Position numbers and translations under genes: made by a program. The notes beneath the pieces are model-generated. The model worked only from the letters and a program-made list of their open reading frames with translations. It was not told the origin of the DNA and did not search any database. Positions 35,169-59,765 of a stretch of 64,000 nt of DNA are shown in pieces (positions within the stretch are counted from its first letter, which is position 1; each line of letters starts with the position of its first letter). Source of the DNA: Macrostomum lignano. Its lineage: Eukaryota. Location: NCBI GenBank assembly GCA_002269645.1, contig NIVC01000923.1:1-64000 (forward strand), in the 5' to 3' direction.

Positions 35169-38100
35169 ATGACAACAAGAAAGAATCGATCGGCAGTCAT
35201 ACCGGTCGACGGCGCATCAAAGTCGGCATCAAAGAGGAGTGCCCGGCTACTAGCCACCCGATGCGGCAATCGGATCTACTTCACCATCGCGGACATCCCG
35301 CCACCAAGTCTGCTGTCGCTGCGACCGCTCCAGCCGAGGCGGTGGAGTCTGAAATCCTTCGACAAGAGCCGGAGTTCGAATTCGTTGCAGGGATCGCCAC
35401 GCAGCGATCGAGCCGAGTCCGAAAAAATTGTCCTGGTGACGGCCAAGCGGTGGACTGTGAGCTGTTTGACCAGCGCCCTGGCCTCCGCTAGACCCGATAG
35501 GTAGGTAGCGGCTTTGGCCATTGAGTAGCGTCTGGATGGAGTGAGAGCGACTGAGATGGAGTGAGAGTGACTGAGATGGAGTGAGAGTGACTGAGATGGA
35601 GTTAGAGTGAATGAGATGGAATGAGAGTGACTGAGATGGAGTGAGAGTGACTGAGATGGAATGAGAGTGACTGAGATGGAGTGAGAGTGACTGAGTTGGA
35701 GCGAGATTGACTGAGATGGAATGAGAGTGACTGAGATGGAGTGAGAGAGATGGAGTGAGAGTGACTGAGATGGAGTGAGAGAGATGGAGTGAGAGTGACT
35801 GAGATGCAGTTAGAGCGACTGAGATGGAGTGAGAGTGACTGAGATGGGTGAGAGTGACTGAGATAGAGCGAGAGTGACTGAGATAGAGTTAGAGTGAATG
35901 AGATGGAGTTAGAGTGACTGAGATGGAGTGAGAGAGATGGAGTGAGAGTGACTGAGATGCAGTTAGAGCGACTGAGATGGAGTGAGAGTGACTGAGATGG
36001 GTGAGAGTGACTGAGATAGAGCGAGAGTGACTGAGATAGAGTTAGAGTGAATGAGATGGAGTTAGAGTGACTGAGATGGAGTGAGAGTGACTGAGATGGA
36101 ATGAGAGTGACTGAGATGGAGAGAGAGTGACTGAGTTGGAGCGAGAGTGACTGAGATGGAATGAGAGTGACTGAGATGGAGTGAGAGAGATGGAGTGAGA
36201 GTGACTGAGATGGAGTTAAAGTGAATGAGATGGAGTGAGAGAGATGGAGTTAGAGTGACTGAGATGGAATGAGAGTGACTGAGATGGAGTGATAGTGACT
36301 GAGATGGAGTGAGAGTGACTGAGATGGAGTGAGAGTGACTGAGATGGAGTGAGAGTGACTGAGATAGAGCTAGAGTGACTGAGATAGAGCGAGAGTGACT
36401 GAGATGGAGTTAAAGTGAATGAGATGGAGTTAGAGAGATGGAGTTAGAGTGACTGAGATGGAGTGAGAGCGACTGAGATGGAGTGAGAGTGACTGAGATG
36501 GAGTTAGAGTGACTGAGATACAGCTAGAGTGACTGAGATAGAGCGAGACTGACTGAGATGGAGTTAGAGTGACTGAGATGGAATGAGAGTGACTGAGATG
36601 GAGTGATAGTGACTGAGATGGAGTGAGAGTGACTGAGATGGAGTGAGAGTGACTGAGATGGAGTGAGAGTGACTGAGATAGAGCTAGAGTGACTGAGATA
36701 GAGCGAGAGTGACTGAGATGGAGTTAAAGTGAATGAGATGGAGTTAGAGAGATGGAGTTAGAGTGACTGAGATGGAGTGAGAGCGACTGAGATGGAGTGA
36801 GAGTGACTGAGATGGAGTTAGAGTGACTGAGATACAGCTAGAGTGACTGAGATAGAGCGAGACTGACTGAGATGGAGTTAGAGTGACTGAGATGGAGTGA
36901 GAGTGACTGAGATGGAATGAGAGTGACTGAGATGGAGTGAGAGTGACTGAGATGGAGTGAGAGTGACTGAGATGGAGTGAGAGTGACTGAGATGGAGTGA
37001 GAGTGACTGAGATGGAGTGAGAGTGACTGAGATGGAGTGAGAGTGACTGAGATGGGTGAGAGTGACTGAGATGGGTGAGAGTGACTGAGATGGAGTGAGA
37101 GTGACTGAGATGGGTGAGAGTGACTGAGATGGGTGAGAGTGACTGAGATGGAGTGAGAGTGACTGAGATGGAGTGAGAGTGACTGAGAGGGAGTGAGAGT
37201 GACTGAGATGGGTGAGAGTGACTGAGATGGGTGAGAGTGACTGAGATGGAGTGAGAGTGACTGAGATGGAGTGAGAGTGACTGAGAGGGAGTGAGAGTGA
37301 CTGAGATGGGTGAGAGTGACTGAGATGGAGTTAGAGTGACTGAGATGGAGTGAGAGTGACTGAGATGGAATGAGAGTGACTGAGATGGAGAGAGAGTGAC
37401 TGAGTTGGAGCGAGAGTGACTGAGATGGAATGAGAGTGACTGAGATGGAGTGAGAGAGATGGAGTGAGAGTGACTGAGATGGAGTTAAAGTGAATGAGAT
37501 GGAGTGAGAGAGATGGAGTTAGAGTGACTGAGATGGAATGAGAGTGACTGAGATGGAGTGATAGTGACTGAGATGGAGTGAGAGTGACTGAGATGGAGTG
37601 AGAGTGACTGAGATGGAGTGAGAGTGACTGAGATAGAGCTAGAGTGACTGAGATAGAGCGAGAGTGACTGAGATGGAGTTAAAGTGAATGAGATGGAGTT
37701 AGAGAGATGGAGTTAGAGTGACTGAGATGGAGTGAGAGCGACTGAGATGGAGTGAGAGTGACTGAGATGGAGTTAGAGTGACTGAGATACAGCTAGAGTG
37801 ACTGAGATAGAGCGAGAGTGACTGAGATGGAGTTAGAGTGACTGAGATGGAGTGAGAGTGACTGAGATGGAATGAGAGTGACTGAGATGGAGTGAGAGTG
37901 ACTGAGATGGAGTGAGAGTGACTGAGATGGAGTGAGAGCGACTGAGATGGAGTGAGAGTGACTGAGATGGGTGAGAGTGACTGAGATGGGTGAGAGTGAC
38001 TGAGATGGAGTGAGAGTGACTGAGATGGGTGAGAGTGACTGAGATGGGTGAGAGTGACTGAGATGGAGTGAGAGTGACTGAGATGGAGTGAGAGTGACTG

Positions 38101-40478
38101 AGATGGAGAGAGAGTGACTGAGATGGGTGAGAGTGACTGAGATGGAGTGAGAGTGACTGAGATGGAGTGAGAGAGTCAGTGGGTGAGAGTGACTGAGATG
38201 AAGTAAGAGTGACTGAGATGGAGTGAGAGTGACTGAGATGGAGTGAGAATGACTGAGATGGAGTGAGAGAGTCAGTGGGTGAGAGTGACTGAGATGGAGT
38301 GAGAGTGACTGAGATGGAGTGAGAGTGACTGAGATGGAGTGAGAGTGACTGAGATGGAGTGAGAGTGACTGAGATGGGTGAGAGTGACTGAGATGGGTGA
38401 GAGTGACTGAGATGGAGTGAGAGCGACTGAGATGGAGTGAGAGTGACTGAGATGGGTGAGAGTGACTGAGATGGGTGAGAGTGACTGAGATGGAGTGAGA
38501 GTGACTGAGATGGAGTGAGAGTGACTGAGATGGAGTGAGAGTGACTGAGATGGAGTGAGAGTGACTGAGATGGAGTGAGAGTGACTGAGAGGGAGTGAGA
38601 GTGACTGAGATGGGTGAGAGTGACTGAGATGAAGTAAGAGTGACTGAGATGGAGTGAGAGTGACTGAGATGGGTGAGAATGACTGAGATGAAGTGAGAGT
38701 GACTGAGATGGAGTGAGAGTGAGAATGACTGAGATGGAGTGAGAGTGACTGAGATGGAGTGAGAGTGACTGAGATGAATTAAGAGTGACTGAGATGGAGT
38801 GAGAGTGACTGAGATGGAGTGAGAGTGACTGAGATGAAGTAAGAGTGACTGAGATGGAGTGAGAGTGACTGAGATGGAGTGAGAGTGAGAATGACTGAGA
38901 TGGAGTGAGAGAGATGGAGTTAGAGTGTCGGAGATAGTCTGAGTGGCTGAGATGGAGTGAGAGTGACTGAGATGGGTGAGAATGATTGAGATGAAGTGAG
39001 AGTGACTGAGGTGGGTGAGAGTGACTGAGATGAAGTAAGAGTGACTAAGATGAAGTGAGAGTGACTGAGATGGAGTGAGAGTGACTGAGATGAAGTGAGA
39101 GTGACTGAGATGGAGTGAGAGTGACTGAGATGGAGTGAGAGTGACTGAGATGGAGTGAGAGTGACTGAGATTGAGTTAGAGTGACTGAGATGGTGGAGTG
39201 AGAGTGACTGAGATGGTGGAGTGAGAGTGACTGAGATGAAGTAAGAGTGACTGAGATGGAGTGAGAATGACTGAGATGGAGTGAGAGAGATGGAGTTAGA
39301 GTGTCGGAGATAGTCTGAGTGACTGAGATTGAGTTAGAGTGACTGAGATGGTGGAGTGAGAGTGACTGAGATGGTGGAGTGAGAGTGACTAAGATGGTGG
39401 AGTGAGAGTGACTGAGATGAAGTAAGAGTGACTGAGATGGAGTGAGAATGACAGAGATGGAGTGAGAGAGATGGAGTTTGAGTGTCGGAGATAGTCTGAG
39501 TGACTGAGATTGAGTTAGAGTGACTGAGATGGTGGAGTGAGAGTGACTGAGATGGTGGAGTGAGAGTGACTGAGATGAAGTAAGAGTGACTGAGATGGAG
39601 TGAGAATGACTGAGATGGAGTGAGAGAGATGGAGTTAAAGTGTCGGAGATAGTCTGAGTGACTGAGATTGAGTTAGAGTGACTGAGATGGTGGAGTGAGA
39701 GTGACTGAGATGAAGTAAGAGTGACTGAGATGGAGTGAGAATGACTGAGATGGAGTGAGAGAGATGGAGTTAGAGTGTCGGAGATAGTCTGAGTGACTGA
39801 GATTGAGTTAGAGTGACTGAGATGGTGGAGTGAGAGTGACTGAGATGGTGGAGTGAGAGTGACTAAGATGGTGGAGTGAGAGTGACTGAGATGAAGTAAG
39901 AGTGACTGAGATGGAGTGAGAATGACAGAGATGGAGTGAGAGAGATGGAGTTTGAGTGTCGGAGATAGTCTGAGTGGCTGAGATGGAGTGAGAGTGACTA
40001 GGCTGGAGTGTTAATGTCTGGGAATTACTGATGACATCCCAGTAACCGACGTGAACGCCAGAGAAGCTAATAAACTATTCGCTGCAAACAATCTAACAGC
40101 CTCACGGCCGCGGCAGAAATTTGGAGCAAGCCGGAGTTTCGAGGCGACCAGAAGTTTCAGCAGCGTCGACGGAGGCGACGACGTAGACGGAGGCGCTCGC
40201 AACAACTACAACAACAACAACAACAACAAAAACAACAACAACAACAACAGCAGCAGCAGCAACAACAACAACAACAGCATCAGCAGCAGCAACCGCTGAA
40301 AAAGTCAAGCGAAAGCCAGTACCTGGTGCTGGAGCCGCATCAGGAGGAGGATCACGTAAGTCCCGACAGCGGAAATACCAGCAGCGAAGCAGTTTTACCA
40401 AGCAGGACTTACTACACCAGCATTCGACGCTTGAGAAGAGACCGACAAAAGTTCGAATTGTCAGCTGATCAGAGCTGA
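35169..40478 (+). CDS. Putative two-exon orphan protein (236 aa) with an Arg10 tract followed by poly-Gln
   Basis: Exon 1 is 35169-35500 (ATG in GCCATGA context; donor AG|GTAGGT, phase 2). Exon 2 is 40100-40478 (acceptor CTAACAG, phase 2) and reads LTAAAEIWSKPEFRGDQKFQQRRRRRRRRRRSQQLQQQ..PLKKSSESQYLVLEPHQEEDHVSPDSGN..stop. Both exons are GC-rich against an AT-rich background. No recognisable domain. Confidence 0.55.
35530..40005 (+). repeat. 4.5-kb 20-bp minisatellite GAGAGTGACTGAGATGGAGT with higher-order structure
   Basis: Roughly 220 copies filling the putative orphan-gene intron. Confidence 0.97.
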
Positions 40479-40769: not shown

Positions 40770-41450
40770 AGACTTCAATTTTTTAGCGGTGACCTTGAAC
40801 TGGTTAAAGTCGCTTTGGGTTAGAGATTTTCCATTTTCTATTGGTGACCTTGAAAACTGGTTAAAGTCGCTCTGAGTTGGGGATTTTCCATTTTCTATTG
40901 GTGACCTTGAAAACTGGTTAACGTCGCTATGATTTGGGGATTTTCCATTTTCTATCGGTGACCTTGAACTGGTTAAGGTCGCCATGAGTTGGGGATTTCC
41001 CATTTTCTATTGGTGACCTTAAAAACTGGTTAAAGTCGCTCTGAGTTGGGGATTTTCCATTTTCTATTGGTGACCTTGAAAACTGGTTAAAGTCACTCTG
41101 AGTTGGGGATTTCCCATTTCCTATTGGTGACCTTGAAAACTGGTTAAAGTCGCTCTGAGTTGGGGATTTTCCATTTTCTATTGGTGACCTCGAAAACTGG
41201 TTAAAGTCGCTCTGAGTTTGGGATTTCCCATTTTCTATCGGTGACCTTGAAAACTGGTTAAAGTCGCTCTGAGTTGGGGATTTCCCATTTTCTATCGGTG
41301 ACCTTGAAAACTGGTTAAAGTCGCTCTGAGTTGGGGATTTTCCATTTTCTATTGGTGACCTTGAACTGGTAAGGGTCGCTCTGAGTTGGGGATTTTCCAT
41401 TTTCTATTGGTGACCTTGAACTGGTTAAAATTGCTCTGAGTGGAGTTTTT
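40770..41450. repeat. 57-bp minisatellite TGGTTAAAGTCGCTCTGAGTTGGGGATTTTCCATTTTCTATTGGTGACCTTGAAAAC
   Basis: About 12 copies; the source of ORFs 40755-41587. Confidence 0.95.
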
Positions 41451-42481
41451 CCATTCGGGTGACCTTGAAGTGGTTTGAAGGTAATTTGAATTGGGGATTT
41501 TTCATGTGCTAAGCGGTGAAGTTGAAGTTGGTTAAAGCCACTTTGAGTGGGGTACCAGTTGAAGCTACAGTAAAAAGATTCGCACAATTCATTTTGGGAA
41601 CATTGAACTGTACCTATTTAACCAAACGCACAAGAAACGTCTCGACTAGAATCAATAATTAATATGATGAACATCCAATCGTGTATTTCAACTGCTTACT
41701 GCTCAATTGGGCTTGCAGTACATTGTAAATCAAAGCGGCATATAACCCAAAACGTCTAGAAGAGCTTGCATGTTACAAAGGAAACTGTGACAGGCATAAT
41801 GCATTTCATAAAATAATTTTGAAAGCAATCAGTGTAATGCAAATATCGGGATTGAATCATAAACAAAATGATAAACAAAATAAGTTCTTTTATTAAAAAT
41901 GGCAGTGGCATTAGCTAGACTTTAAAAATTAATGGGCTGTAGAAAAAATTAACAAAATAACTAGAATTTACAAGAAAATTTGAAACTATGAAATCGTATT
42001 TTAAATCTGAAAATAAAAGAATGAGAATCTTAAGATAGTTTAATAAACAGTGGAACTGAAATAGTCATTTTTAACAAAGCAATTGTTTTATTTAAAGTGC
42101 AAGAAGTCCTTTATAAAGCTAATAGCTAAACAGACTCTTACTAGTGAAAAGTATAGAAATCAGAACTCTCTGCGACAACTTCTTTCAAGTTTTATGGGTA
42201 GGATAGCTTTTCGAAAATTACAAACAATTCAATGCGGGGATGACAGACTATTGATTAATGAGTAGTAGTACGTAGTGTTACTTATTTTGTTTTTTACTTG
42301 TTTAAATTGAAAACTCACTATTTATCAGTGGGCGTTAGAAATCAAGGACAGACGTTCAATTGTAGAACTGTAAACTATTTAATGACTTCAACAAAGCGAT
42401 ACAGGACTATGTGGAACCCAACTGATTAAACACGGTGGAAAAAGTGTTAGAAAGCAATATGCGAAAAGTTTCCAAGATTAG

Positions 42482-45231
42482 TTAGCTGTCATCGGAGGTG
42501 GCAATTACCAGGGGCGCATCTTCGCCTTCATCATCGGCACTACTGCGATCTTGCACGCTGCCAAAGTCTTTTTGGGACTCGACTTTTGCACTCACATTGG
42601 ACATTGATGATGATGACTCGTTGATAGTTCTTATGCAAGATTCTGCCGATACACGAGCATCGACTACATCATGTCCCGGTTCGATTTTGACCACCGCAGA
42701 CACTTTCTGATTGATATTAGCCGTAATTTTCTCCGATAATACGCTACCATTCGAGGCTGGATCGTCAGTGCCGTTCGTGTTGACAAGCACTGCAGAATGA
42801 ACTGTTACGGTTTCACTAACAGTACAATTCTCCATAGTTGCATCTGCATGTGATTCAGCGCAAGCTGCATTTGTGGAGACAGCGTTGTCAGAGGACAATT
42901 CACCGTCACGATTAACAACCTCATCCAGCGATTCTATCTTGACAATAGTCTGTTGACCATGGCTGAATGAGGCTTCACAGTCAACTGCAGCTGAATCCAG
43001 CAGTACGGAATGATTTACAGTGCCATTCGGTGCTGCATAATTTGCGGCAGCGCTCTCAAACTTTGCTTTATCGTCGTTTTTCAGCTCAGAATGATCGGCT
43101 GCATCAATTTGAGACTCATTCTTGCCAGAGATCGGCTGCGAAAATTCACAAGCCAAATGAGAGTTTGCAGGGAGAAACACTTTAGTTGCATCCGGATCTG
43201 TTTGTTTGTCATTTGTAGGACTGACAGGGGCTGTTGTTTGACTTGGAATAGCAGCCGGTACAACATTAGCAGTAGTCACTGACTTCACTTCAACAACTTC
43301 TTTCTTTAAAGCCGAATGGACGGTCTCTAATACTCTAATAGCACCAACTGATGTAGCAATGGACATCGGTGCATTTTGCATCTGGAAATCGACAGCGTCC
43401 AGTATCTTGAGCTCCACAACGGTTGTTGGCGGCGCAACCACTGGGACGCTGGCTGAAGCTGCTGGGGCTGCGGCAGCGGCTGCTGCTGCGGCGGCAGCGC
43501 TCGACAGTCTCCTCTCGGCGAGCTTGCTCTTCAGACGTTCGAGCACTTCCGGATTCGGCATGGAGTGACTACATCCGCCGGAAACGGAACCATTGCCGAC
43601 CCCGTTGTGGGACGCTCGTCTGTCCTCGTCAGCTGCCGACTGTCCATCACCAGACGGTCCGGCCAGCGAGGTCGAAGATGCTGTCGATGAAGCCAAAGAA
43701 ACTGACGAATCGCAACCGTCAGTAGCTGTTGGATGATCCGTCGTTAATCCCTGGCGGTCGCCTTCGACACCGCCGTTGACTCCGTGGCTTGTTGATGCCG
43801 CGGTTAAAGTCTCCGACGACATTGTTGTAGCTGTTGCAGCTGCGGCCGCCACCCGCTGACAATTGTGATAATCCTCGATGGCTTTTGGCGAGAATTTGTA
43901 GATTTTCTTCTGGCGAAATCCGTGCGGCTCGAAGTATCGCCCGATGTCGCGCGAGTGCCTGCAAAAAACCGGAATTGGTAAAAGAATAAAAAATTGATGC
44001 TCTCTTAAGCTATTTTTATAGTTTTTTTTCACAACTTTTCTGTAAATTTGGCGCATTGTTTCCTTTCTGTCAATTGTCGAATAAGAACAGTGCCTACCGA
44101 ATGCCTCGAGCGAAGCACTCGTAATTATCCGTCTTGTTCCCCTTGATATGCTTCCACAGTTTGGCAATGGCCGACGGCGTAACAACTTTAAATAGGCGAT
44201 TGTATTTGTCAACCCATTCGATGTTGGCTCGGCAGCGACTGTTGTCCAACAGTTTCAGTAGAAACAGGTGAATCATCGGTTTCTGACCTGCGAATGCGAT
44301 GGTGTGTGTGAATGTGTGTGTACGGCACTCTCGCACATCTTCTGACTCTCGCGCCGCGGCCCCTGCTAGTTGATTTCGCGCGCGGTCACCACATTCGTTT
44401 GGGGCTCGTGTGCATTGAAATTTGGCGCAAACCCCCCCCCCCAGGGCACAGAGAGAGTACCTGCCTGACTAGTAGAAAGTCAAAGGGTCGCTGTACACCC
44501 TGCGTGAGCGAGTGTGTGAGTGCGTTAATGCGTACAGTATTGGGGCGCTTGCATGTGCTCAGGAGTCTGCGGAATGGACAGAATTGTCGTCAGCACTGCT
44601 TGTGGGACGATGTCTCGCACTAGGGTGCCCACAACGGTCTTGAATTGATTGTTGTTATTAATTTTAAGATGAGATATTAGCAAGTTTTTAGAGATGTAGG
44701 GAGGAGTAGAATGTGCATCCCCACAACCTACAGCCCACAGTTCACTGGTCCCTCACCGTGCCAACAGAACAGTTCAGGTGCCAGACGTTGAAACTGTCGA
44801 ATCTCTTGCTGCTGCTCAGCCGGCTCCAATGTCGCGCTGGCGCCAGCCGAAGCGCCATCCAGCCCGCGTTTGCGCCGCTTGTTGGCAGGCGGAGACCCGG
44901 CAGCTTCGCCGGTAGCAGATGGCTGCTGTTGCTGCGTCGGGTTATGCGACACGTTTGATCCGTTTCCAGCTGTACTGGTGGACAATCTTGATGAGTCAGC
45001 GGACTGATCTAGCAATTGACGTCGCTTCAACTGTTGCTGCAGCTGTTGCTGCTGTTGTTGCAAGTGCAGATTCTGCTGTGGAAATGGTGCAAACTGATAG
45101 TGCGGCGGTTGAAACTGCGGCGACGCCTGCAGGCTACCAGCTGGAGCGCCGGAGCGATGCAGAACGGCCAATTGACAGAAACTCGGCAGGGTTGGCGGCG
45201 GATGGTGAGATGTTGGGGGATGTGTCGACAA

Positions 45232-45265
<34 letters not shown>

Positions 45266-45428
45266 GCCAGGCAACCAAACCGGACCAGCTGTCCAGGCTG
45301 TGGCGACTGCTGCGACTGCAAACTGTAATCCAACTGAGGCGGCGGGTAAGCAAACTTATAAACGCTGCTACTTCCAGCTGAAGCTGGCATTGCGGCTGCT
45401 GTGTAGGGTTGAAGCGCAGTTGACTGTT

Positions 45429-45459
<31 letters not shown>

Positions 45460-45892
45460 CGGCGGCGGCGGCGGCTGTGGAAACATCGGAGGAAGCTGCG
45501 GAGGCGGCGGGAAGCTTATGGATCGAAGCAGGTCAGGCCTGAGGCCATTTGTCGGCGGCGCAATCGGAGACGGCGAAGCCTTTGACGACATCAAAGTTGA
45601 CGTCGTTGGCAATGATGACGACGACGACGCAATAGTCTGCTGCATCGGCAGAAGGTGCGGCGCTGTGAATGGCGAAATCTTATTACCTTGAGTTGCCGCG
45701 GCTGCCGCGGCTGCTGCTGCTGCTGCCGCTGCTGCCGCTGCCGCCGCAGCAGCAGCCTGCAGATGCTGGTGATGCTGGTGCGGCTGTTGAGAAGAATGAG
45801 GAAGAGAAGGAGCACCAGCAGGAGGAGGCAGCAGACTCAGCTGCTGAGGCGGAGGGTACATGTAGTTACACCCTGTCGGACGAAACACCTGA

Positions 45893-45930
<38 letters not shown>

Positions 45931-47395
45931 TTGTTGTTGTTGCTGCTGCTGCTGCGGAAGATGGTGCGACTGATGCGCCGATATCAGCAGCTGCTGCACA
46001 ACTTCTCGCTGCGATCGGGCCAAATTGAAACTGTCAACCAAACCGTTGAATGCGGCCGGCTCCAGCGCTGCCGATGCTGTGGGCTGCTGCTCAGGTGAAG
46101 ATCGACTTGTATCTTCAGTATTTTCTTCGCAACCGTCTTCGCTCACATCTGTAGTTTCACTGTCTGCTTGTGGTTGTTGAGCAGCAGGATTTGAGGATTC
46201 CGGCAGCTGCTGTAACGGCGGAGACAGATTCTCAACGTCCACCTCGCTGTCGCTGCTGACTCGCTCGATTTCAACTTCGACAGTGGCGCCCAGAGACAAC
46301 TGGTGTCCCTCCTCGTGTTCGGCGCTGCTGAATAGCTGGTCGGCTTGAGAAGCGATGAAACTCGTGCAGTTCTCGGGTGTTCCAGGCGGCGTGGCGCATC
46401 GCGACATTGGCTGGTCGCTCACGTCCGACAGGCTGATGGTGCGAATAAGAAAATTAAACACATGTAATTTTTAAGCAGCTTCTCTGAACCCCAAATCTAT
46501 GACAGGCTTGATTTATTGAGATGAAGGCATCCACATGTTCACAGACTTTCTAATTTTCAGACATGCACACTGTCTGTGCCTCGGGGGCTGGGCCTCGTGA
46601 AGATAATTAACTGCCCAAGGATAACCAACGTCTATGGCAAAAAGTCTATGCGTACACTAGTTTTTTAAATCCTGGATTGGCACTTCATTTCGCTTCGGTC
46701 AATTCGCCATAAAAAGAACGCTCTGTTCGAATTTTGGCGGTCTGGCAAGAAGTTTGTATCAATGGTCAGGGAAAGGCAAGTGACAATAACAATTGTTATA
46801 GCATAGAACTTGTGGGTTAGAAAGTGGCAGCTCTAGGCGGTGGTGTGAATTGCGCCATTTAGAGATATGAGAAAAGTTGATCACTGCATGGGTTCGAGGT
46901 AGAAACTTGAACATGTTGCCGAGTGTACATGTGGCATGTAACCTGATAAATGTGGCTGAATGTGCATGTAATGGTTGTAGCCTAGTGGCTAGAGCGTCAG
47001 ACTCATGTCATGACTGAAAGGTCGGGGGTTCGTGTCCTTGAGCAAGACACTTAACTCTGGATTGCTTCAGTTCACCCAGCTGTAAAATGGGTGCCAGCAT
47101 TAGCATTAGTCGATCCGCCAGTCCTTGGACTGAACAGCCGAACGCAGCCTTCAGATGCGCTGCGCAATAGCTGCGGCTGAGCTGTCGGTTGCACATCTGC
47201 CCATTTGGGCGGGTGTATTACTATTATTATTATTATACTATAAACTTGATAAAGGAAGGCAAATGGCTTAGAGACGTACGCGTCAGTTGGGCGATTGTCA
47301 GTATCGCTGGCATCGGGTCGATGATTGAGAAGTTCCTGGCGCTGCTGGTGGAAATCTTCCTCGGTGTCCGGACTTTCAGTGGTCGCAGATGCCAT
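42482..47395 (-). CDS. ETS-domain transcription factor with a divergent ETS domain, about 1152 aa, 4 exons
   Basis: Exons 47395-47280, 46432-44757, 44287-44098 and 43958-42482 (3459 nt; phases 2,1,2; GT..AG). ETS domain 44287-43892: MIHLFLLKLLDNSRCRANIEWVDKYNRLFKVVTPSAIAKLWKHIKGNKTDNYECFARGIR|HSRDIGRYFEPHGFRQKKIYKF. The N-terminal half is Q/A/P-rich and the C-terminal half is S/T/A/acidic. Exon 1 is the least certain. Confidence 0.88.
46970..47238 (+). mobile_element. tRNA-derived CORE-like SINE, copy 2, antisense in ETS intron 1
   Basis: TAGCCTAGTGGCTAGAGCG A box, truncated B box GGGGTTCG, then TGTCCTTGAGCAAGACACTTAAC..CAGTTCACCCAGCTGTAAAATGGGTGCCAGCAT, GCAGCCTTCAGA shared with copy 1, and a (TAT)n tail. 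Confidence 0.8.
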
Positions 47396-47792: not shown

Positions 47793-47975
<183 letters not shown>

Positions 47976-48529: not shown

Positions 48530-49120
48530 TGCTTCACTGTGTGTCACTGTGTGTCACTGTGCAGCCATTCTTCACTGTGTGTCACTGTGCAGCCATGCTT
48601 CACTGTGTGTCACTGTGCAGCCATTCTTTACTGTGTGTCACTGTGCAGCCATGCTTCACTGTGTGTCACTGTGCAGCCATGCTTCACTATGTGTGTCACT
48701 GTGCAGCCATGCTTCACTGTGTGTCACTGTGCAGCCATGCTTCACTATGTGTGTCACTGTGCAGCCATGCTTCACTGTGTGTCACTGTGCAGCCATGCTT
48801 CACTGTGTGTCACTGTGCAGCCATGCTTCACTGTGTGTCACTGTGCAGCCATGCTTCACTGTGTGTCACTGTGCAGCCATGCTTCACTGTGTGTCACTGT
48901 GCAGCCATGCTTCACTGTGTGTCACTGTGCAGCCATGCTTCACTGTGTGTCACTGTGCAGCCATGCTTCACTGTGTGTCACTGTGCAGCCATTCTTCACT
49001 GTGTGTCACTGTGCAGCCATGCTTCACTGTGTGTCACTGTGCAGCCATGCTTCACTGTGTGTCACTGTGCAGCCATGCTTCACTGTGTGTCACTGTGTGT
49101 CACTGTGCAGCCATGCCTCT
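48530..49120 (+). repeat. 28-bp minisatellite CACTGTGTGTCACTGTGCAGCCATGCTT (inverted partner of 51705-52590)
   Basis: About 21 copies. Confidence 0.97.
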
Positions 49121-49534: not shown

Positions 49535-49566
49535 GCAAAGACAGACAGACAGGCTGACAGACAGGC

Positions 49567-49659
<93 letters not shown>

Positions 49660-49792
49660 CAGACAGACAGACAGGCTTACAGACAGACAGGCAGACAGAC
49701 AGACAGACAGACAGACAGGCTGACAGACAGACAGACAGACAGGCAGGCAGACAGGCAGGCAGACAGACAGACAGGCAGACAGACAGACAGAC

Positions 49793-49857
<65 letters not shown>

Positions 49858-49864
49858 GGCAGAC

Positions 49865-49925
<61 letters not shown>
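49535..49925. repeat. (AGAC)n microsatellite
   Basis: Read directly. Confidence 0.95.

Positions 49926-50613: not shown

Positions 50614-59765
<9,152 letters not shown>

What the first reader, a model, noticed from the sequence alone, without database searches (positions are those of the whole stretch)
43892..44287. Highly divergent ETS domain: recognition helix keeps both arginines but loses the YYY and other invariant residues
Seen: IHLFLLKLL..IEWVD..FKVV..AIAKLWKHIKGN..DNYECFARGIR|HSR..KKIYKF. Established: ETS domains have LW(Q/E)FL, WGxxKN and MNY(E/D)KLSRxLRYYY, where the two Arg (ETS1 R391/R394) read the GGA core and the following Tyr contacts the flanking base. Here W becomes H in helix 1, WG becomes WK, MNYEK becomes DNYEC and YYY becomes HSR, and the wing is rewritten, while RxxR and the phase-2 intron after the second Arg are kept. 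The domain sits in the middle of a ~1150-aa Q/A/P-rich protein with no PNT domain that I could recognise. Inference: a lineage-specific ETS subfamily with possibly altered specificity, or redox sensitivity through the Cys next to the recognition helix.
Basis: partly seen in the sequence, partly recalled or inferred. Interest (0 to 1): 0.7.

Follow-up and report, generated by a model that had tools for sequence, protein, structure and literature searches.

The report
Divergent flatworm ETS transcription factor gene
This is a real, intact and selectively constrained ETS-family transcription-factor gene of the flatworm Macrostomum lignano; its DNA-binding domain is unusually diverged but keeps the residues that read GGA, so it is an interesting family member rather than a new kind of protein.

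Summary
On the minus strand, two exons (44287-44098 and 43958 onward) encode an ETS domain that passes Pfam's threshold (53.4 bits against a cutoff of 26.9). Its AlphaFold2 model is confident (pLDDT 94.7) and superposes best on ETV6-DNA structures.

The window is Macrostomum lignano: a 411-aa database protein is an exact substring of my spliced 1105-aa model. The domain keeps both DNA-reading arginines and most of the core. It loses the helix-1 Trp (to His), the Gly of "LWG" (to Lys), the Met of "MNY" (to Asp) and YYY (to HSR).

These changes are not degeneration. A 68%-identical paralogue keeps them, with synonymous sites saturated and dN 0.26. Both domain introns are conserved.

The Ser-Arg that replaces Tyr-Tyr is not private to this gene. 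Among 131 ETS domains it occurs only in this small group and in a spiralian ESE-like (ELF3/ELF5/EHF-related) clade. That clade's profile also scores the window domain best.

No PNT domain is detectable. From its residues I predict ordinary GGAA binding of the ETV6-like class IIb type, but this is untested. The redox idea has no support. Interest is modest: a new, fast-evolving member of a known family.

The parts
44757..46407 (-). Exon A (CDS from the first in-frame ATG at 46407; 550 codons plus 1 base). It is Q/A/P-rich and low-complexity, with no Pfam domain. A possible acceptor at ~46434 suggests a further 5' exon or a trans-splice site.
   Evidence: ORF and donor CACG|gtgagg. Pfam finds 0 families. 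The junction peptide APELFCWH-G-QKPMIH is collinear with the annotated paralogue's APELFIWN-G-HKPMIH. The acceptor has the same phase as the paralogue's exon 1/2 junction.
46225..46257 (-). N-terminal acidic motif SSDSEVDVENL, shared with the paralogue (TSDSEADVSDY)
   Evidence: weak local matches, collinear order
44866..44880 (-). Basic cluster KRRKR (likely nuclear localisation signal); the paralogue has HRKRKR at the same relative place
   Evidence: the NLS function is inferred
44757..44805 (-). Conserved pre-domain extension EIRQFQRLAPELFCWH, immediately N-terminal to the ETS domain
   Evidence: BLASTP alignment with the paralogue
44288..44756 (-). Intron 1 (phase 1; split Gly codon 8 residues before the helix-1 Phe)
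   Evidence: gt...ag. Same phase and position in the paralogue and in an ELF-like gene, L007. One residue off in Capitella and Pinctada ESE-like genes.
44098..44287 (-). Exon B: N-terminal two thirds of the ETS domain (helix 1, strands 1-2, helix 2, and the first part of recognition helix 3 up to RGI-R)
43959..44097 (-). Intron 2 (139 nt, phase 2, inside the codon of the second DNA-reading Arg)
   Evidence: CG|gtaggc...ttttgcag|G. Identical position and phase in the paralogue, Capitella and Pinctada ESE-like genes and an ELF-like gene.
42482..43958 (-). Exon C: end of helix 3 (HSRDIG), wing (KKIYKF), an extra C-terminal helix, then ~450 aa of low-complexity tail; stop TAA at 42484-42482
   Evidence: Pfam finds 0 families in the tail. 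Database protein P0151 (411 aa) is an exact substring of the spliced model across the B/C junction.
43892..44273 (-). ETS domain as matched by Pfam (IHLF...KIYKF, model aa 556-636), interrupted by intron 2
43940..44123 (-). Recognition helix H3, YECFARGIRHSRDIG (spans intron 2). The two Arg read GGA. His follows the second Arg, and Ser-Arg replace Tyr-Tyr.
   Evidence: DSSP on the AF2 model gives H52-66; column table; Wei et al. 2010 for residue roles
43841..43888 (-). Predicted extra alpha-helix directly after strand 4 (PKAIEDYHNCQRVAAA). The KA(I/L)..Y motif is conserved across the divergent group.
   Evidence: AF2 H84-99, pLDDT 95-98; alignment A1
43511..43555 (-). Conserved C-terminal motif NPEVLERLKSKLAER (paralogue: NSEVLAKLKIALAER)
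42500..42514 (-). C-terminal motif PLVIA, 5 residues from the stop; also near the paralogue's C-terminus (SPLVIADCEYQ)

Best explanation
The locus is a functional Macrostomum lignano gene for a sequence-specific ETS transcription factor of ~1105 aa or more, encoded on the minus strand in three or more exons.

Its ETS domain is a fast-evolved flatworm offshoot of the spiralian ESE-like (ELF3/ELF5/EHF-related) clade. In that clade the two tyrosines after the recognition helix had already become Ser/Cys-Arg. The flatworm branch additionally replaced the helix-1 Trp and the helix-2 Gly, lost the PNT domain and gained a C-terminal helix.

Shown: ETS membership, the predicted fold, conservation, intron homology and the sequence signatures.

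Inferred: the domain binds DNA as a monomeric winged helix-turn-helix. The two retained Arg of helix 3 read the GG of a GGAA core. The His after the second Arg (as in ETV6/7) favours A at +4. The Ile in strand 4 gives class-II-like tolerance at -3. The retained Trp, Lys and Tyr residues and the KKIYKF wing hold the phosphate backbone. The Arg that replaces the third Tyr plausibly takes over that Tyr's backbone contact. The Q/A/P-rich flanks and the short conserved motifs (acidic N-terminal motif, EVL..LK..LAER, PLVIA) would be regulatory or cofactor-binding regions, and KRRKR a nuclear localisation signal.
For: ETS membership: Pfam 53.4 bits, twice the cutoff; all PDB sequence hits are ETS domains. 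The AF2 model has pLDDT 94.7 with the H1-S1-S2-H2-H3-S3-S4 order, and its best structural matches are ETV6/ETV4/FLI1 bound to DNA.

Constraint: the paralogue P0002 is 68% identical in the domain, keeps HSR, and shares collinear flanking motifs. pS is 0.79 (saturated) against dN 0.255 over 106 codons. Both domain introns are conserved in the paralogue.

Organism and splice: P0151 is an exact substring of the spliced model, and P0001 is named as M. lignano.

Affinity to the spiralian ESE-like clade:
- [S/C] at column 65 and R at column 66 occur only in this group and that clade among 131 domains.
- Subfamily HMM scores for the window domain are 80.8 bits (spiralian SR clade), 70.6 (rotifer-like), 67.1 (ESE), 57.7 (ELF), 49.6 (class I) and 42.7 (ETV6). 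All seven group members rank the SR clade first or tied.
- The Capitella member of that clade matches EHF/ELF5/ELF3 best (82/80/75 bits) and has a PNT domain.
- The NJ topology nests the group in that clade.
- The phase-2 intron in the second Arg codon is shared.
- Loss of PNT is frequent in mollusc ESE genes (PMC10664356).

Residue roles: Wei et al. 2010.
Against: No binding data exist for any member of the group.

Tree support for placement inside the spiralian ESE-like clade is weak (8-21% bootstrap). The group profile hits human ELF2/ELF1 slightly better than ELF5/EHF in the PDB, and the single sequence hits ETV6 best, so the subfamily origin rests mainly on the SR-G[YF]F signature and HMM scores.

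Loss of the conserved Trp, Gly and Met could reduce stability or affinity in ways a predicted structure does not reveal. I did not obtain direct transcript evidence for this locus. The 5' end of the gene is unresolved.
Confidence: 0.7

Rival explanations
1. The group descends from the PNT-less ELF/E74 subfamily (ELF1/2/4) rather than from ESE-like genes. On this view the SR-G[YF]F signature is convergent.
For: The profile of the divergent group hits ELF2 (62 bits) and ELF1 (60 bits) ahead of ELF5 (52) and EHF (50) in the PDB. There is no PNT domain, and the ETS domain sits mid-protein with an acidic N-terminus, as in ELF/E74. Intron 1 sits at exactly the ELF-like position, one residue from the ESE-like position.
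Against: An HMM of 15 ELF-type domains scores the window domain 23 bits lower than the spiralian SR-clade HMM. None of the ELF hallmark (MGRALRYYYQRGIL) is kept. The [S/C]-R signature is absent from all ELF-type domains examined.
Confidence: 0.15
2. It is an ETV6/Yan (TEL, class IIb) orthologue that lost its PNT domain.
For: ETV6 is the best single-sequence PDB hit (1e-8) and the best structural match (4MHG, TM 0.75/0.83). It shares His after the second Arg (RH..) with ETV6/7.
Against: The ETV6-type HMM gives the lowest score of all subfamilies (42.7 bits). The His is present only in the two Macrostomum paralogues, while relatives have Tyr or Phe, so it is a late, convergent change. There is no PNT domain.
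Confidence: 0.05
3. The domain has lost, or radically changed, sequence-specific DNA binding. It might then act as a protein-interaction module or recognise a non-GGA site. Alternatively the locus is an unexpressed, decaying copy.
For: Seven positions conserved in at least 63% of other ETS domains are changed, including the helix-1 Trp and the Tyr triplet. The Pfam score is about half that of canonical domains (53 against 71-84 bits for the spiralian ESE-like proteins). No transcript evidence was obtained here.
Against: Both base-reading Arg and the backbone-contacting Trp, Lys and Tyr positions are retained. There is strong purifying selection against the paralogue. The 1105-codon ORF is intact across canonical splice sites. 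The fold prediction is confident. SPI-class proteins also lack two of the three Tyr and still bind GGAA. Relatives occur as intron-less contigs in assemblies of sequencing runs, consistent with transcripts.
Confidence: 0.08

Closest known systems
Spiralian ESE-like ETS genes (ELF3/ELF5/EHF-related), e.g. Capitella teleta ELT91496.1, Pinctada imbricata KAK3101725.1, Lineus XP_064635308.1, Arion A0A0B6ZJP0, Brachionus CAF0888778.1
   Same: Ser/Cys-Arg replaces Tyr-Tyr after the second Arg, followed by G-[YF]-F. The phase-2 intron in the second Arg codon is shared. This clade gives the best subfamily-HMM score. The C-terminal 'KF(G/S)PKA' motif is shared. PNT loss is common in this clade.
   Different: Those proteins keep the helix-1 Trp, the LWG Gly and the MNY Met, and have a longer wing insertion (…P.D.NYPKKLCFKF). 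The ETS domain sits at the C-terminus, often with a PNT domain and an AT-hook-like GRP motif. The window protein has none of these, and its domain is mid-protein.
ETV6/ETV7 (TEL; class IIb ETS factors)
   Same: His follows the second recognition-helix Arg. ETV6 is the best PDB sequence hit and the best structural match. A helix follows strand 4.
   Different: ETV6 has RHYY, a PNT domain, LWD/LWG and MTY. It gives the lowest subfamily-HMM score. The His is not shared by the window gene's more distant relatives.
ELF1/ELF2/ELF4 and Drosophila E74 (class IIa)
   Same: No PNT domain; the domain sits mid-protein. Both domain introns are at identical positions and phases in an ELF-like gene. These are the best PDB hits for the group profile.
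   Different: The canonical LWEFLL, LWG, MNYETMGRALRYYY motifs are all altered in the window protein.
SPI1/PU.1 (class III)
   Same: A precedent that an ETS domain can lose two of the three Tyr (RNYG) and other 'invariant' residues and still bind GGAA through the two Arg.
   Different: A different set of substitutions. It ranks low among PDB sequence hits for the window domain (4e-5 against 1e-8 for ETV6).

Membership tests
ETS domain family (PF00178) | Profile match above the curated threshold | tested here: met
   53.4 bits against a cutoff of 26.9, covering profile positions 4-80 of 81
ETS domain family (PF00178) | Winged helix-turn-helix fold: three helices on a four-stranded antiparallel sheet | tested here: met
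   Prediction only. AF2 pLDDT 94.7, pTM 0.85, with H1-S1-S2-H2-H3-(S3)-S4. Foldseek top 50 are all ETS domains, TM up to 0.83.
ETS domain family (PF00178) | Two invariant arginines in helix 3 that read the GG of GGA | tested here: met
   R57 and R60 are invariant in 74/74 aligned domains including the window's; column table; role from Wei et al. 2010
ETS domain family (PF00178) | Three conserved tryptophans and the hydrophobic core | tested here: inconclusive
   W24 and W44 and F8, L12, L13, F32, Y55, F83 are kept; the helix-1 Trp is His. 42 of the 131 domains examined also lack that Trp, 14 of them through alignment gaps.
ETS domain family (PF00178) | Tyr triplet after the second Arg (RYYY) | tested here: not met
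   It is HSR. This is not a universal feature: SPI has NYG, SPDEF QYY, ETV6 HYY, and spiralian ESE-like genes have [YF][SC]R.
ETS domain family (PF00178) | Specific binding to GGA(A/T) core sites | not testable with these tools
   Needs PBM, SELEX or EMSA
ESE subfamily (ELF3/ELF5/EHF) and its spiralian relatives | Signature R-[YFH]-[SC]-R-x-x-G-(x)-[YF]-F after helix 3 (spiralian clade) | tested here: met
   RHSRDIGRYF, with one extra residue before YF. The signature is exclusive to this clade plus the window group among 131 domains.
ESE subfamily (ELF3/ELF5/EHF) and its spiralian relatives | Best score with the subfamily profile / monophyly in a tree | tested here: inconclusive
   HMM scores: 80.8 bits (spiralian SR clade) against 67.1 (ESE) and 57.7 (ELF). 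NJ nests the group there, but with only 8-21% bootstrap.
ESE subfamily (ELF3/ELF5/EHF) and its spiralian relatives | N-terminal PNT (SAM) domain | tested here: not met
   No Pfam family in the 550-aa exon A or in the paralogue. A possible PNT remnant in distant relatives was inconclusive (hhalign E 0.026, probability 1.9%). PNT loss is common in mollusc ESE genes.
ESE subfamily (ELF3/ELF5/EHF) and its spiralian relatives | ETS domain at the extreme C-terminus | tested here: not met
   The domain spans aa 556-636 of 1105
TEL subfamily (ETV6/ETV7/Yan) | His after the second Arg, plus a PNT domain, plus a subfamily profile match | tested here: not met
   The His is present. There is no PNT, and the ETV6-type HMM gives the lowest subfamily score, 42.7 bits.

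The most novel reading that the evidence does not exclude
The flatworm group (helix-1 His, LWK, HSR/FSM, extra C-terminal helix, no PNT) is a distinct, so far undescribed ETS subfamily. Its rewritten helix-3 C-terminus and wing would give it a binding preference or a regulatory mode outside the four described ETS specificity classes, for example autoinhibition by the extra helix or redox control through the helix-3 Cys.
Probability: 0.15. Interest if true: 0.5.

Novelty: new member of a known kind. Interest (0 to 1): 0.3.

Why it matters
ETS domains are among the most conserved metazoan DNA-binding domains. This gene, its paralogue and a handful of relatives show how far the scaffold can drift: Trp to His in helix 1, Gly to Lys in helix 2, and Tyr-Tyr-Tyr to His-Ser-Arg. 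All the while purifying selection has kept the two base-reading arginines.

The analysis also shows that the Tyr-Tyr to Ser/Cys-Arg change marks a Spiralia-wide ESE-like clade. That is a usable signature for classifying lophotrochozoan ETS genes.

For Macrostomum, a regeneration and stem-cell model with RNAi tools, it adds an uncharacterised, lineage-restricted transcription factor pair to test. It does not open a new mechanism.

Tried and rejected
- Word-index homologue searches found nothing useful. I tried the domain, the group alignment and P0004. Only the full HMMER scan of representatives worked.
- I first took the window for an insect genome, from its Q-rich ORFs and its neighbours. I rejected this when P0001/P0151 identified Macrostomum lignano.
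- I could not identify the organisms behind the relatives from sequencing runs DRR639055 and SRR14039947 or the MetaClust protein P0004.
- A tblastn search of the window with the paralogue's first exon (32 aa) gave no convincing 5' exon.
- Genomic loci for the Lineus, Haliotis and ETV6-like representatives and for P0151 were not on record.
I re-ran it with the identical stretch of database protein P0001.
- A PNT remnant upstream of the ETS domain in distant relatives was inconclusive by profile-profile comparison.
- Literature searches for Macrostomum ETS genes, for a spiralian ETS subfamily and for ETV6 H396Y found no description of this group.
Full report
**What is there.** The feature lies on the minus strand. 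Reading the reverse complement of 43850-44320 gives an exon that starts after an acceptor (…cattcgcag|GTCAGAAACCGATGATTCAC…) at 44287. This exon encodes (G)QKPMIHLFLLKLLDNSRCRANIEWVDKYNRLFKVVTPSAIAKLWKHIKGNKTDNYECFARGI and the first two bases of an Arg codon. A donor follows (CG|gtaggc) at 44098. After a 139-nt intron comes an acceptor (ttttttgcag|G) at 43958, then HSRDIGRYFEPHGFRQKKIYKF…, with the final Phe ending at 43892. The only correction is that the phase-2 intron lies inside the second Arg codon rather than after it.

**Gene model.**
- Upstream, a 580-codon open frame (46470-44731) ends with the donor CACG|gtgagg at 44757. This joins in phase 1 to 44287.
- From the first in-frame ATG (46407) the three exons give 1105 aa ending at a TAA (42484-42482). 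The composition is 13% Ala, 12% Ser, 11% Gln and 8% Pro.
- The A/B junction is supported because the peptide across it, APELFCWH-G-QKPMIH, is collinear with APELFIWN-G-HKPMIH of an annotated paralogue.
- The B/C junction is supported because a 411-aa database protein (P0151) is an exact substring of my spliced model, aa 555-965.
- A good acceptor at ~46434 has the same phase as the paralogue's exon 1/2 junction, so the true 5' end may lie further upstream or be trans-spliced. A tblastn search for such an exon found nothing.

**Is it an ETS domain?** Yes.
- Pfam Ets (PF00178) scores 53.4 bits against a cutoff of 26.9, E 3.4e-14, covering profile positions 4-80 of 81.
- All 68 PDB sequence matches are ETS domains, led by ETV6 (1e-8), ELF2 and ELF1.
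- An AlphaFold2 model built on a 74-sequence alignment has mean pLDDT 94.7 and pTM 0.85. It shows the order H1, S1, S2, H2, H3, (S3), S4, plus an extra helix directly after S4.
- Foldseek against the PDB returns only ETS domains in the top 50. ETV6 bound to DNA (4MHG) is first, with TM 0.75/0.83.

**Which conserved residues are kept and lost.** I compared the domain with 126 other ETS domains, column by column.
- Kept: F8, L12, L13, W24, F32, A41, L43, W44, K48, Y55, E56, both arginines (invariant in 74/74), G69, Y81 and F83.
- Lost: the helix-1 Trp (His), a turn Gly (Arg), the Gly of LWG (Lys), the Met of MNY (Asp) and the Tyr triplet (His-Ser-Arg).

**Organism and relatives.**
- The word-index protein searches found nothing. 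A full HMMER scan of 1.84 billion representatives found 222 hits.
- The top hit is 100% identical and is named as an 'ETS domain-containing protein' of the free-living flatworm Macrostomum lignano.
- The second hit (P0002, PAA66572.1, 429 aa) is an M. lignano paralogue, 68% identical in the domain. It keeps NYECFARGIRHSRDIG.
- Five further unnamed proteins are 29-37% identical: P0004 from MetaClust, and P0005, P0010, P0006 and P0028 from assemblies of sequencing runs. They share the helix-1 His (four of the five; P0004 has Leu there), a non-Gly residue after LW, F-[AGS]-R-[GA]-[IV]-R-[YF]-[SL]-[RM], G-F-F and a KA(I/L)..Y helix.
- I could not identify their organisms.

**Not a pseudogene.**
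- I fetched the paralogue's genomic locus (L001, GCA_002269645.1). It has the same two introns at the same positions and phases.
- Over 106 aligned codons the proportion of synonymous differences is 0.79 (saturated), while dN is 0.255. The duplication is therefore old, and the domain has been under strong purifying selection since.
- Outside the domain the two proteins share, in the same order: an acidic SDSE(V/A)DV motif, a KR(R/K)KR cluster, EIR..Q..APELF.W.G.KP, EVL..LK..LAER and a near-terminal PLVIA.

**Where it belongs within the family.**
- Ser/Cys at the second Tyr position and Arg at the third are not private to this gene. Among the 131 domains compared, Arg at the third position occurs in 15 and Ser/Cys at the second in 14. 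All of them are either the window's group or a set of spiralian proteins with R-[YF]-[SC]-R-x-x-G-[YF]-F. That set comprises Arion, Pinctada, Lineus, Capitella and Brachionus.
- The Capitella member has a PNT domain. Its ETS domain matches human EHF, ELF5 and ELF3 clearly best, at 82, 80 and 75 bits against 63 for ELF2. This spiralian set is therefore ESE-like.
- Subfamily HMMs built from the alignment score the window domain at 80.8 bits (spiralian SR clade), 70.6 (a rotifer-like group), 67.1 (other ESE), 59.2 (a crustacean group), 57.7 (ELF), 49.6 (class I) and 42.7 (ETV6). All seven members of the divergent group rank the SR clade first or tied.
- A neighbour-joining tree joins the window gene to its paralogue (95%) and to P0004, P0005 and P0010 (66%). 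It nests them in the SR clade next to human ELF3/ELF5, but with only 8-21% support.
- The phase-2 intron in the second Arg codon is present in the Capitella and Pinctada genes. It is also present in a canonical ELF-like gene, so it is an old intron and does not discriminate between these origins.
- A published survey reports that mollusc ESE genes are expanded and that nearly half lack the PNT domain (PMC10664356). This makes a PNT-less ESE-derived flatworm gene unremarkable.
- Against this placement, the profile of the divergent group hits ELF2/ELF1 slightly ahead of ELF5/EHF in the PDB, and intron 1 is at exactly the ELF position. I therefore keep an ELF origin as a 0.15 rival.
- An ETV6 origin is unlikely. 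The His is confined to the two Macrostomum paralogues, and the ETV6 profile scores lowest.

**How it most likely works.** Wei et al. 2010 (PMC2905244) established the following.
- The GGA core reflects the two absolutely conserved helix-3 arginines.
- The Tyr after the second Arg sets the +4 preference, and its replacement by His in ETV6/7 gives a strong preference for A.
- A Leu (class II) versus Tyr/Phe (class I) in strand 4 controls tolerance of C at -3.
- The Tyr that contacts the backbone between -1 and -2 is Gly/Ala in SPI proteins, and changing it did not alter specificity.

The window domain has Arg-x-x-Arg, His, Ile at the strand-4 position (KKIYKF aligned to QRLVYQF) and Arg at the third Tyr position. 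The inference, which is not shown, is a monomeric GGAA binder of class IIb-like preference, with Arg617 substituting for a Tyr-phosphate contact.

The predicted extra helix (PKAIEDYHNCQRVAAA) is conserved in the group. It could be structural or autoinhibitory, as are the helices that follow strand 4 in ETV6 and ETS1 (from my own knowledge). This is untested.

The Cys in NYEC is conserved only in the two paralogues. It sits where other ETS proteins have Lys, Thr or Asn, so the redox suggestion has no comparative support.

**Novelty and verdict.** The protein already exists in UniProt under an automatic 'ETS domain-containing protein' name. No paper in the searchable library describes it or its group. 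It is a new, fast-evolving member of a known family. The small flatworm-type group could fairly be called a new sub-branch of the ESE-like clade. Nothing suggests a new mechanism. Interest is 0.3.

**Caveats.**
The PDB searches give the same subfamily names independently.
- The 131-domain sample is enriched for the best hits to this query.
- The structure is a prediction.
- No binding or expression data were available.

Noticed in passing
window 35535-40010: A 4.5-kb satellite of a 20-bp unit (GATGGAGTGAGAGTGACTGA, ~228 copies, 86% matches) with extreme GC skew (~0.78). It creates long spurious ORFs on the minus strand (SLSLHLSHSHSISVTLT…).
   Followed up: partly
window 48544-49097 and 51713-52590: The same 28-bp minisatellite unit occurs in two arrays of opposite orientation (28/28 identical after reverse complement and rotation). 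The arrays bracket an (AGAC)n array (49539-49925) and a 12-bp array (50736-51440). The second array abuts the protein-kinase exon at 53083-52604.
   Followed up: partly
window 40774-41455 and 47794-47973: A 57-bp tandem repeat (x12), 1 kb downstream of the ETS gene's stop, and an (AG)90 microsatellite 1.4 kb upstream of its first ATG.
   Followed up: no
window 60070-59528 and 53083-52604 (minus strand): Exons of a cGMP/cAMP-dependent-type protein kinase gene: a cNMP_binding domain (E 1e-12) and a Pkinase domain (E 3e-44). It is the upstream neighbour of the ETS gene on the same strand.
   Followed up: partly
window 23504-23106 and 5030-4560 (minus strand): An exon of a rhodopsin-family GPCR (7tm_1, E 2e-20) and a fragment of another protein kinase (Pkinase, E 8e-8).
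   Followed up: no
window ~46434 (minus strand): A polypyrimidine-CAG acceptor lies 27 nt upstream of the first ATG of exon A. It has the same phase as the paralogue's exon 1/2 junction (…LSDV… against …LSDA…). The ETS gene probably has an unannotated 5' exon or is trans-spliced.
   Followed up: partly
database protein P0001 (UniRef A0A1I8HT79) against window ~43530-43560: The 296-aa public model of this gene replaces VSLASSTASSTSLA with HLRPRWP, which is the translation of another frame of the same DNA. It also starts at the internal Met of KPMIHLF. It looks like a mis-modelled gene.
   Followed up: partly
representative proteins P0009, P0011, P0013, P0014, P0017 and ~25 others: A large group of short ETS proteins, named members from the bdelloid rotifer Rotaria socialis. 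They independently lack the helix-1 Trp and the LWG Gly but keep RYYY (…LWxKVKxRxT…MNYxTFARGIRYYY…TFRF). 35 of 131 domains lack both residues.
   Followed up: partly
representative proteins P0003 (Solemya velum) and P0008 (Palaemon carinicauda): P0003 carries three tandem copies of a truncated SPDEF-like ETS segment, either exon triplication or an assembly or annotation artefact. P0008 carries two ETS domains in one protein, the first with a degenerate RTVW in place of RYYY.
   Followed up: no
L002/L003 (run DRR639055) and L004 (run SRR14039947): The distant relatives P0005, P0010 and P0006 are encoded without the two ancient ETS introns on 1.1-2.7-kb contigs, so these contigs are probably transcripts. 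Two different family members come from the same sample.
   Followed up: partly
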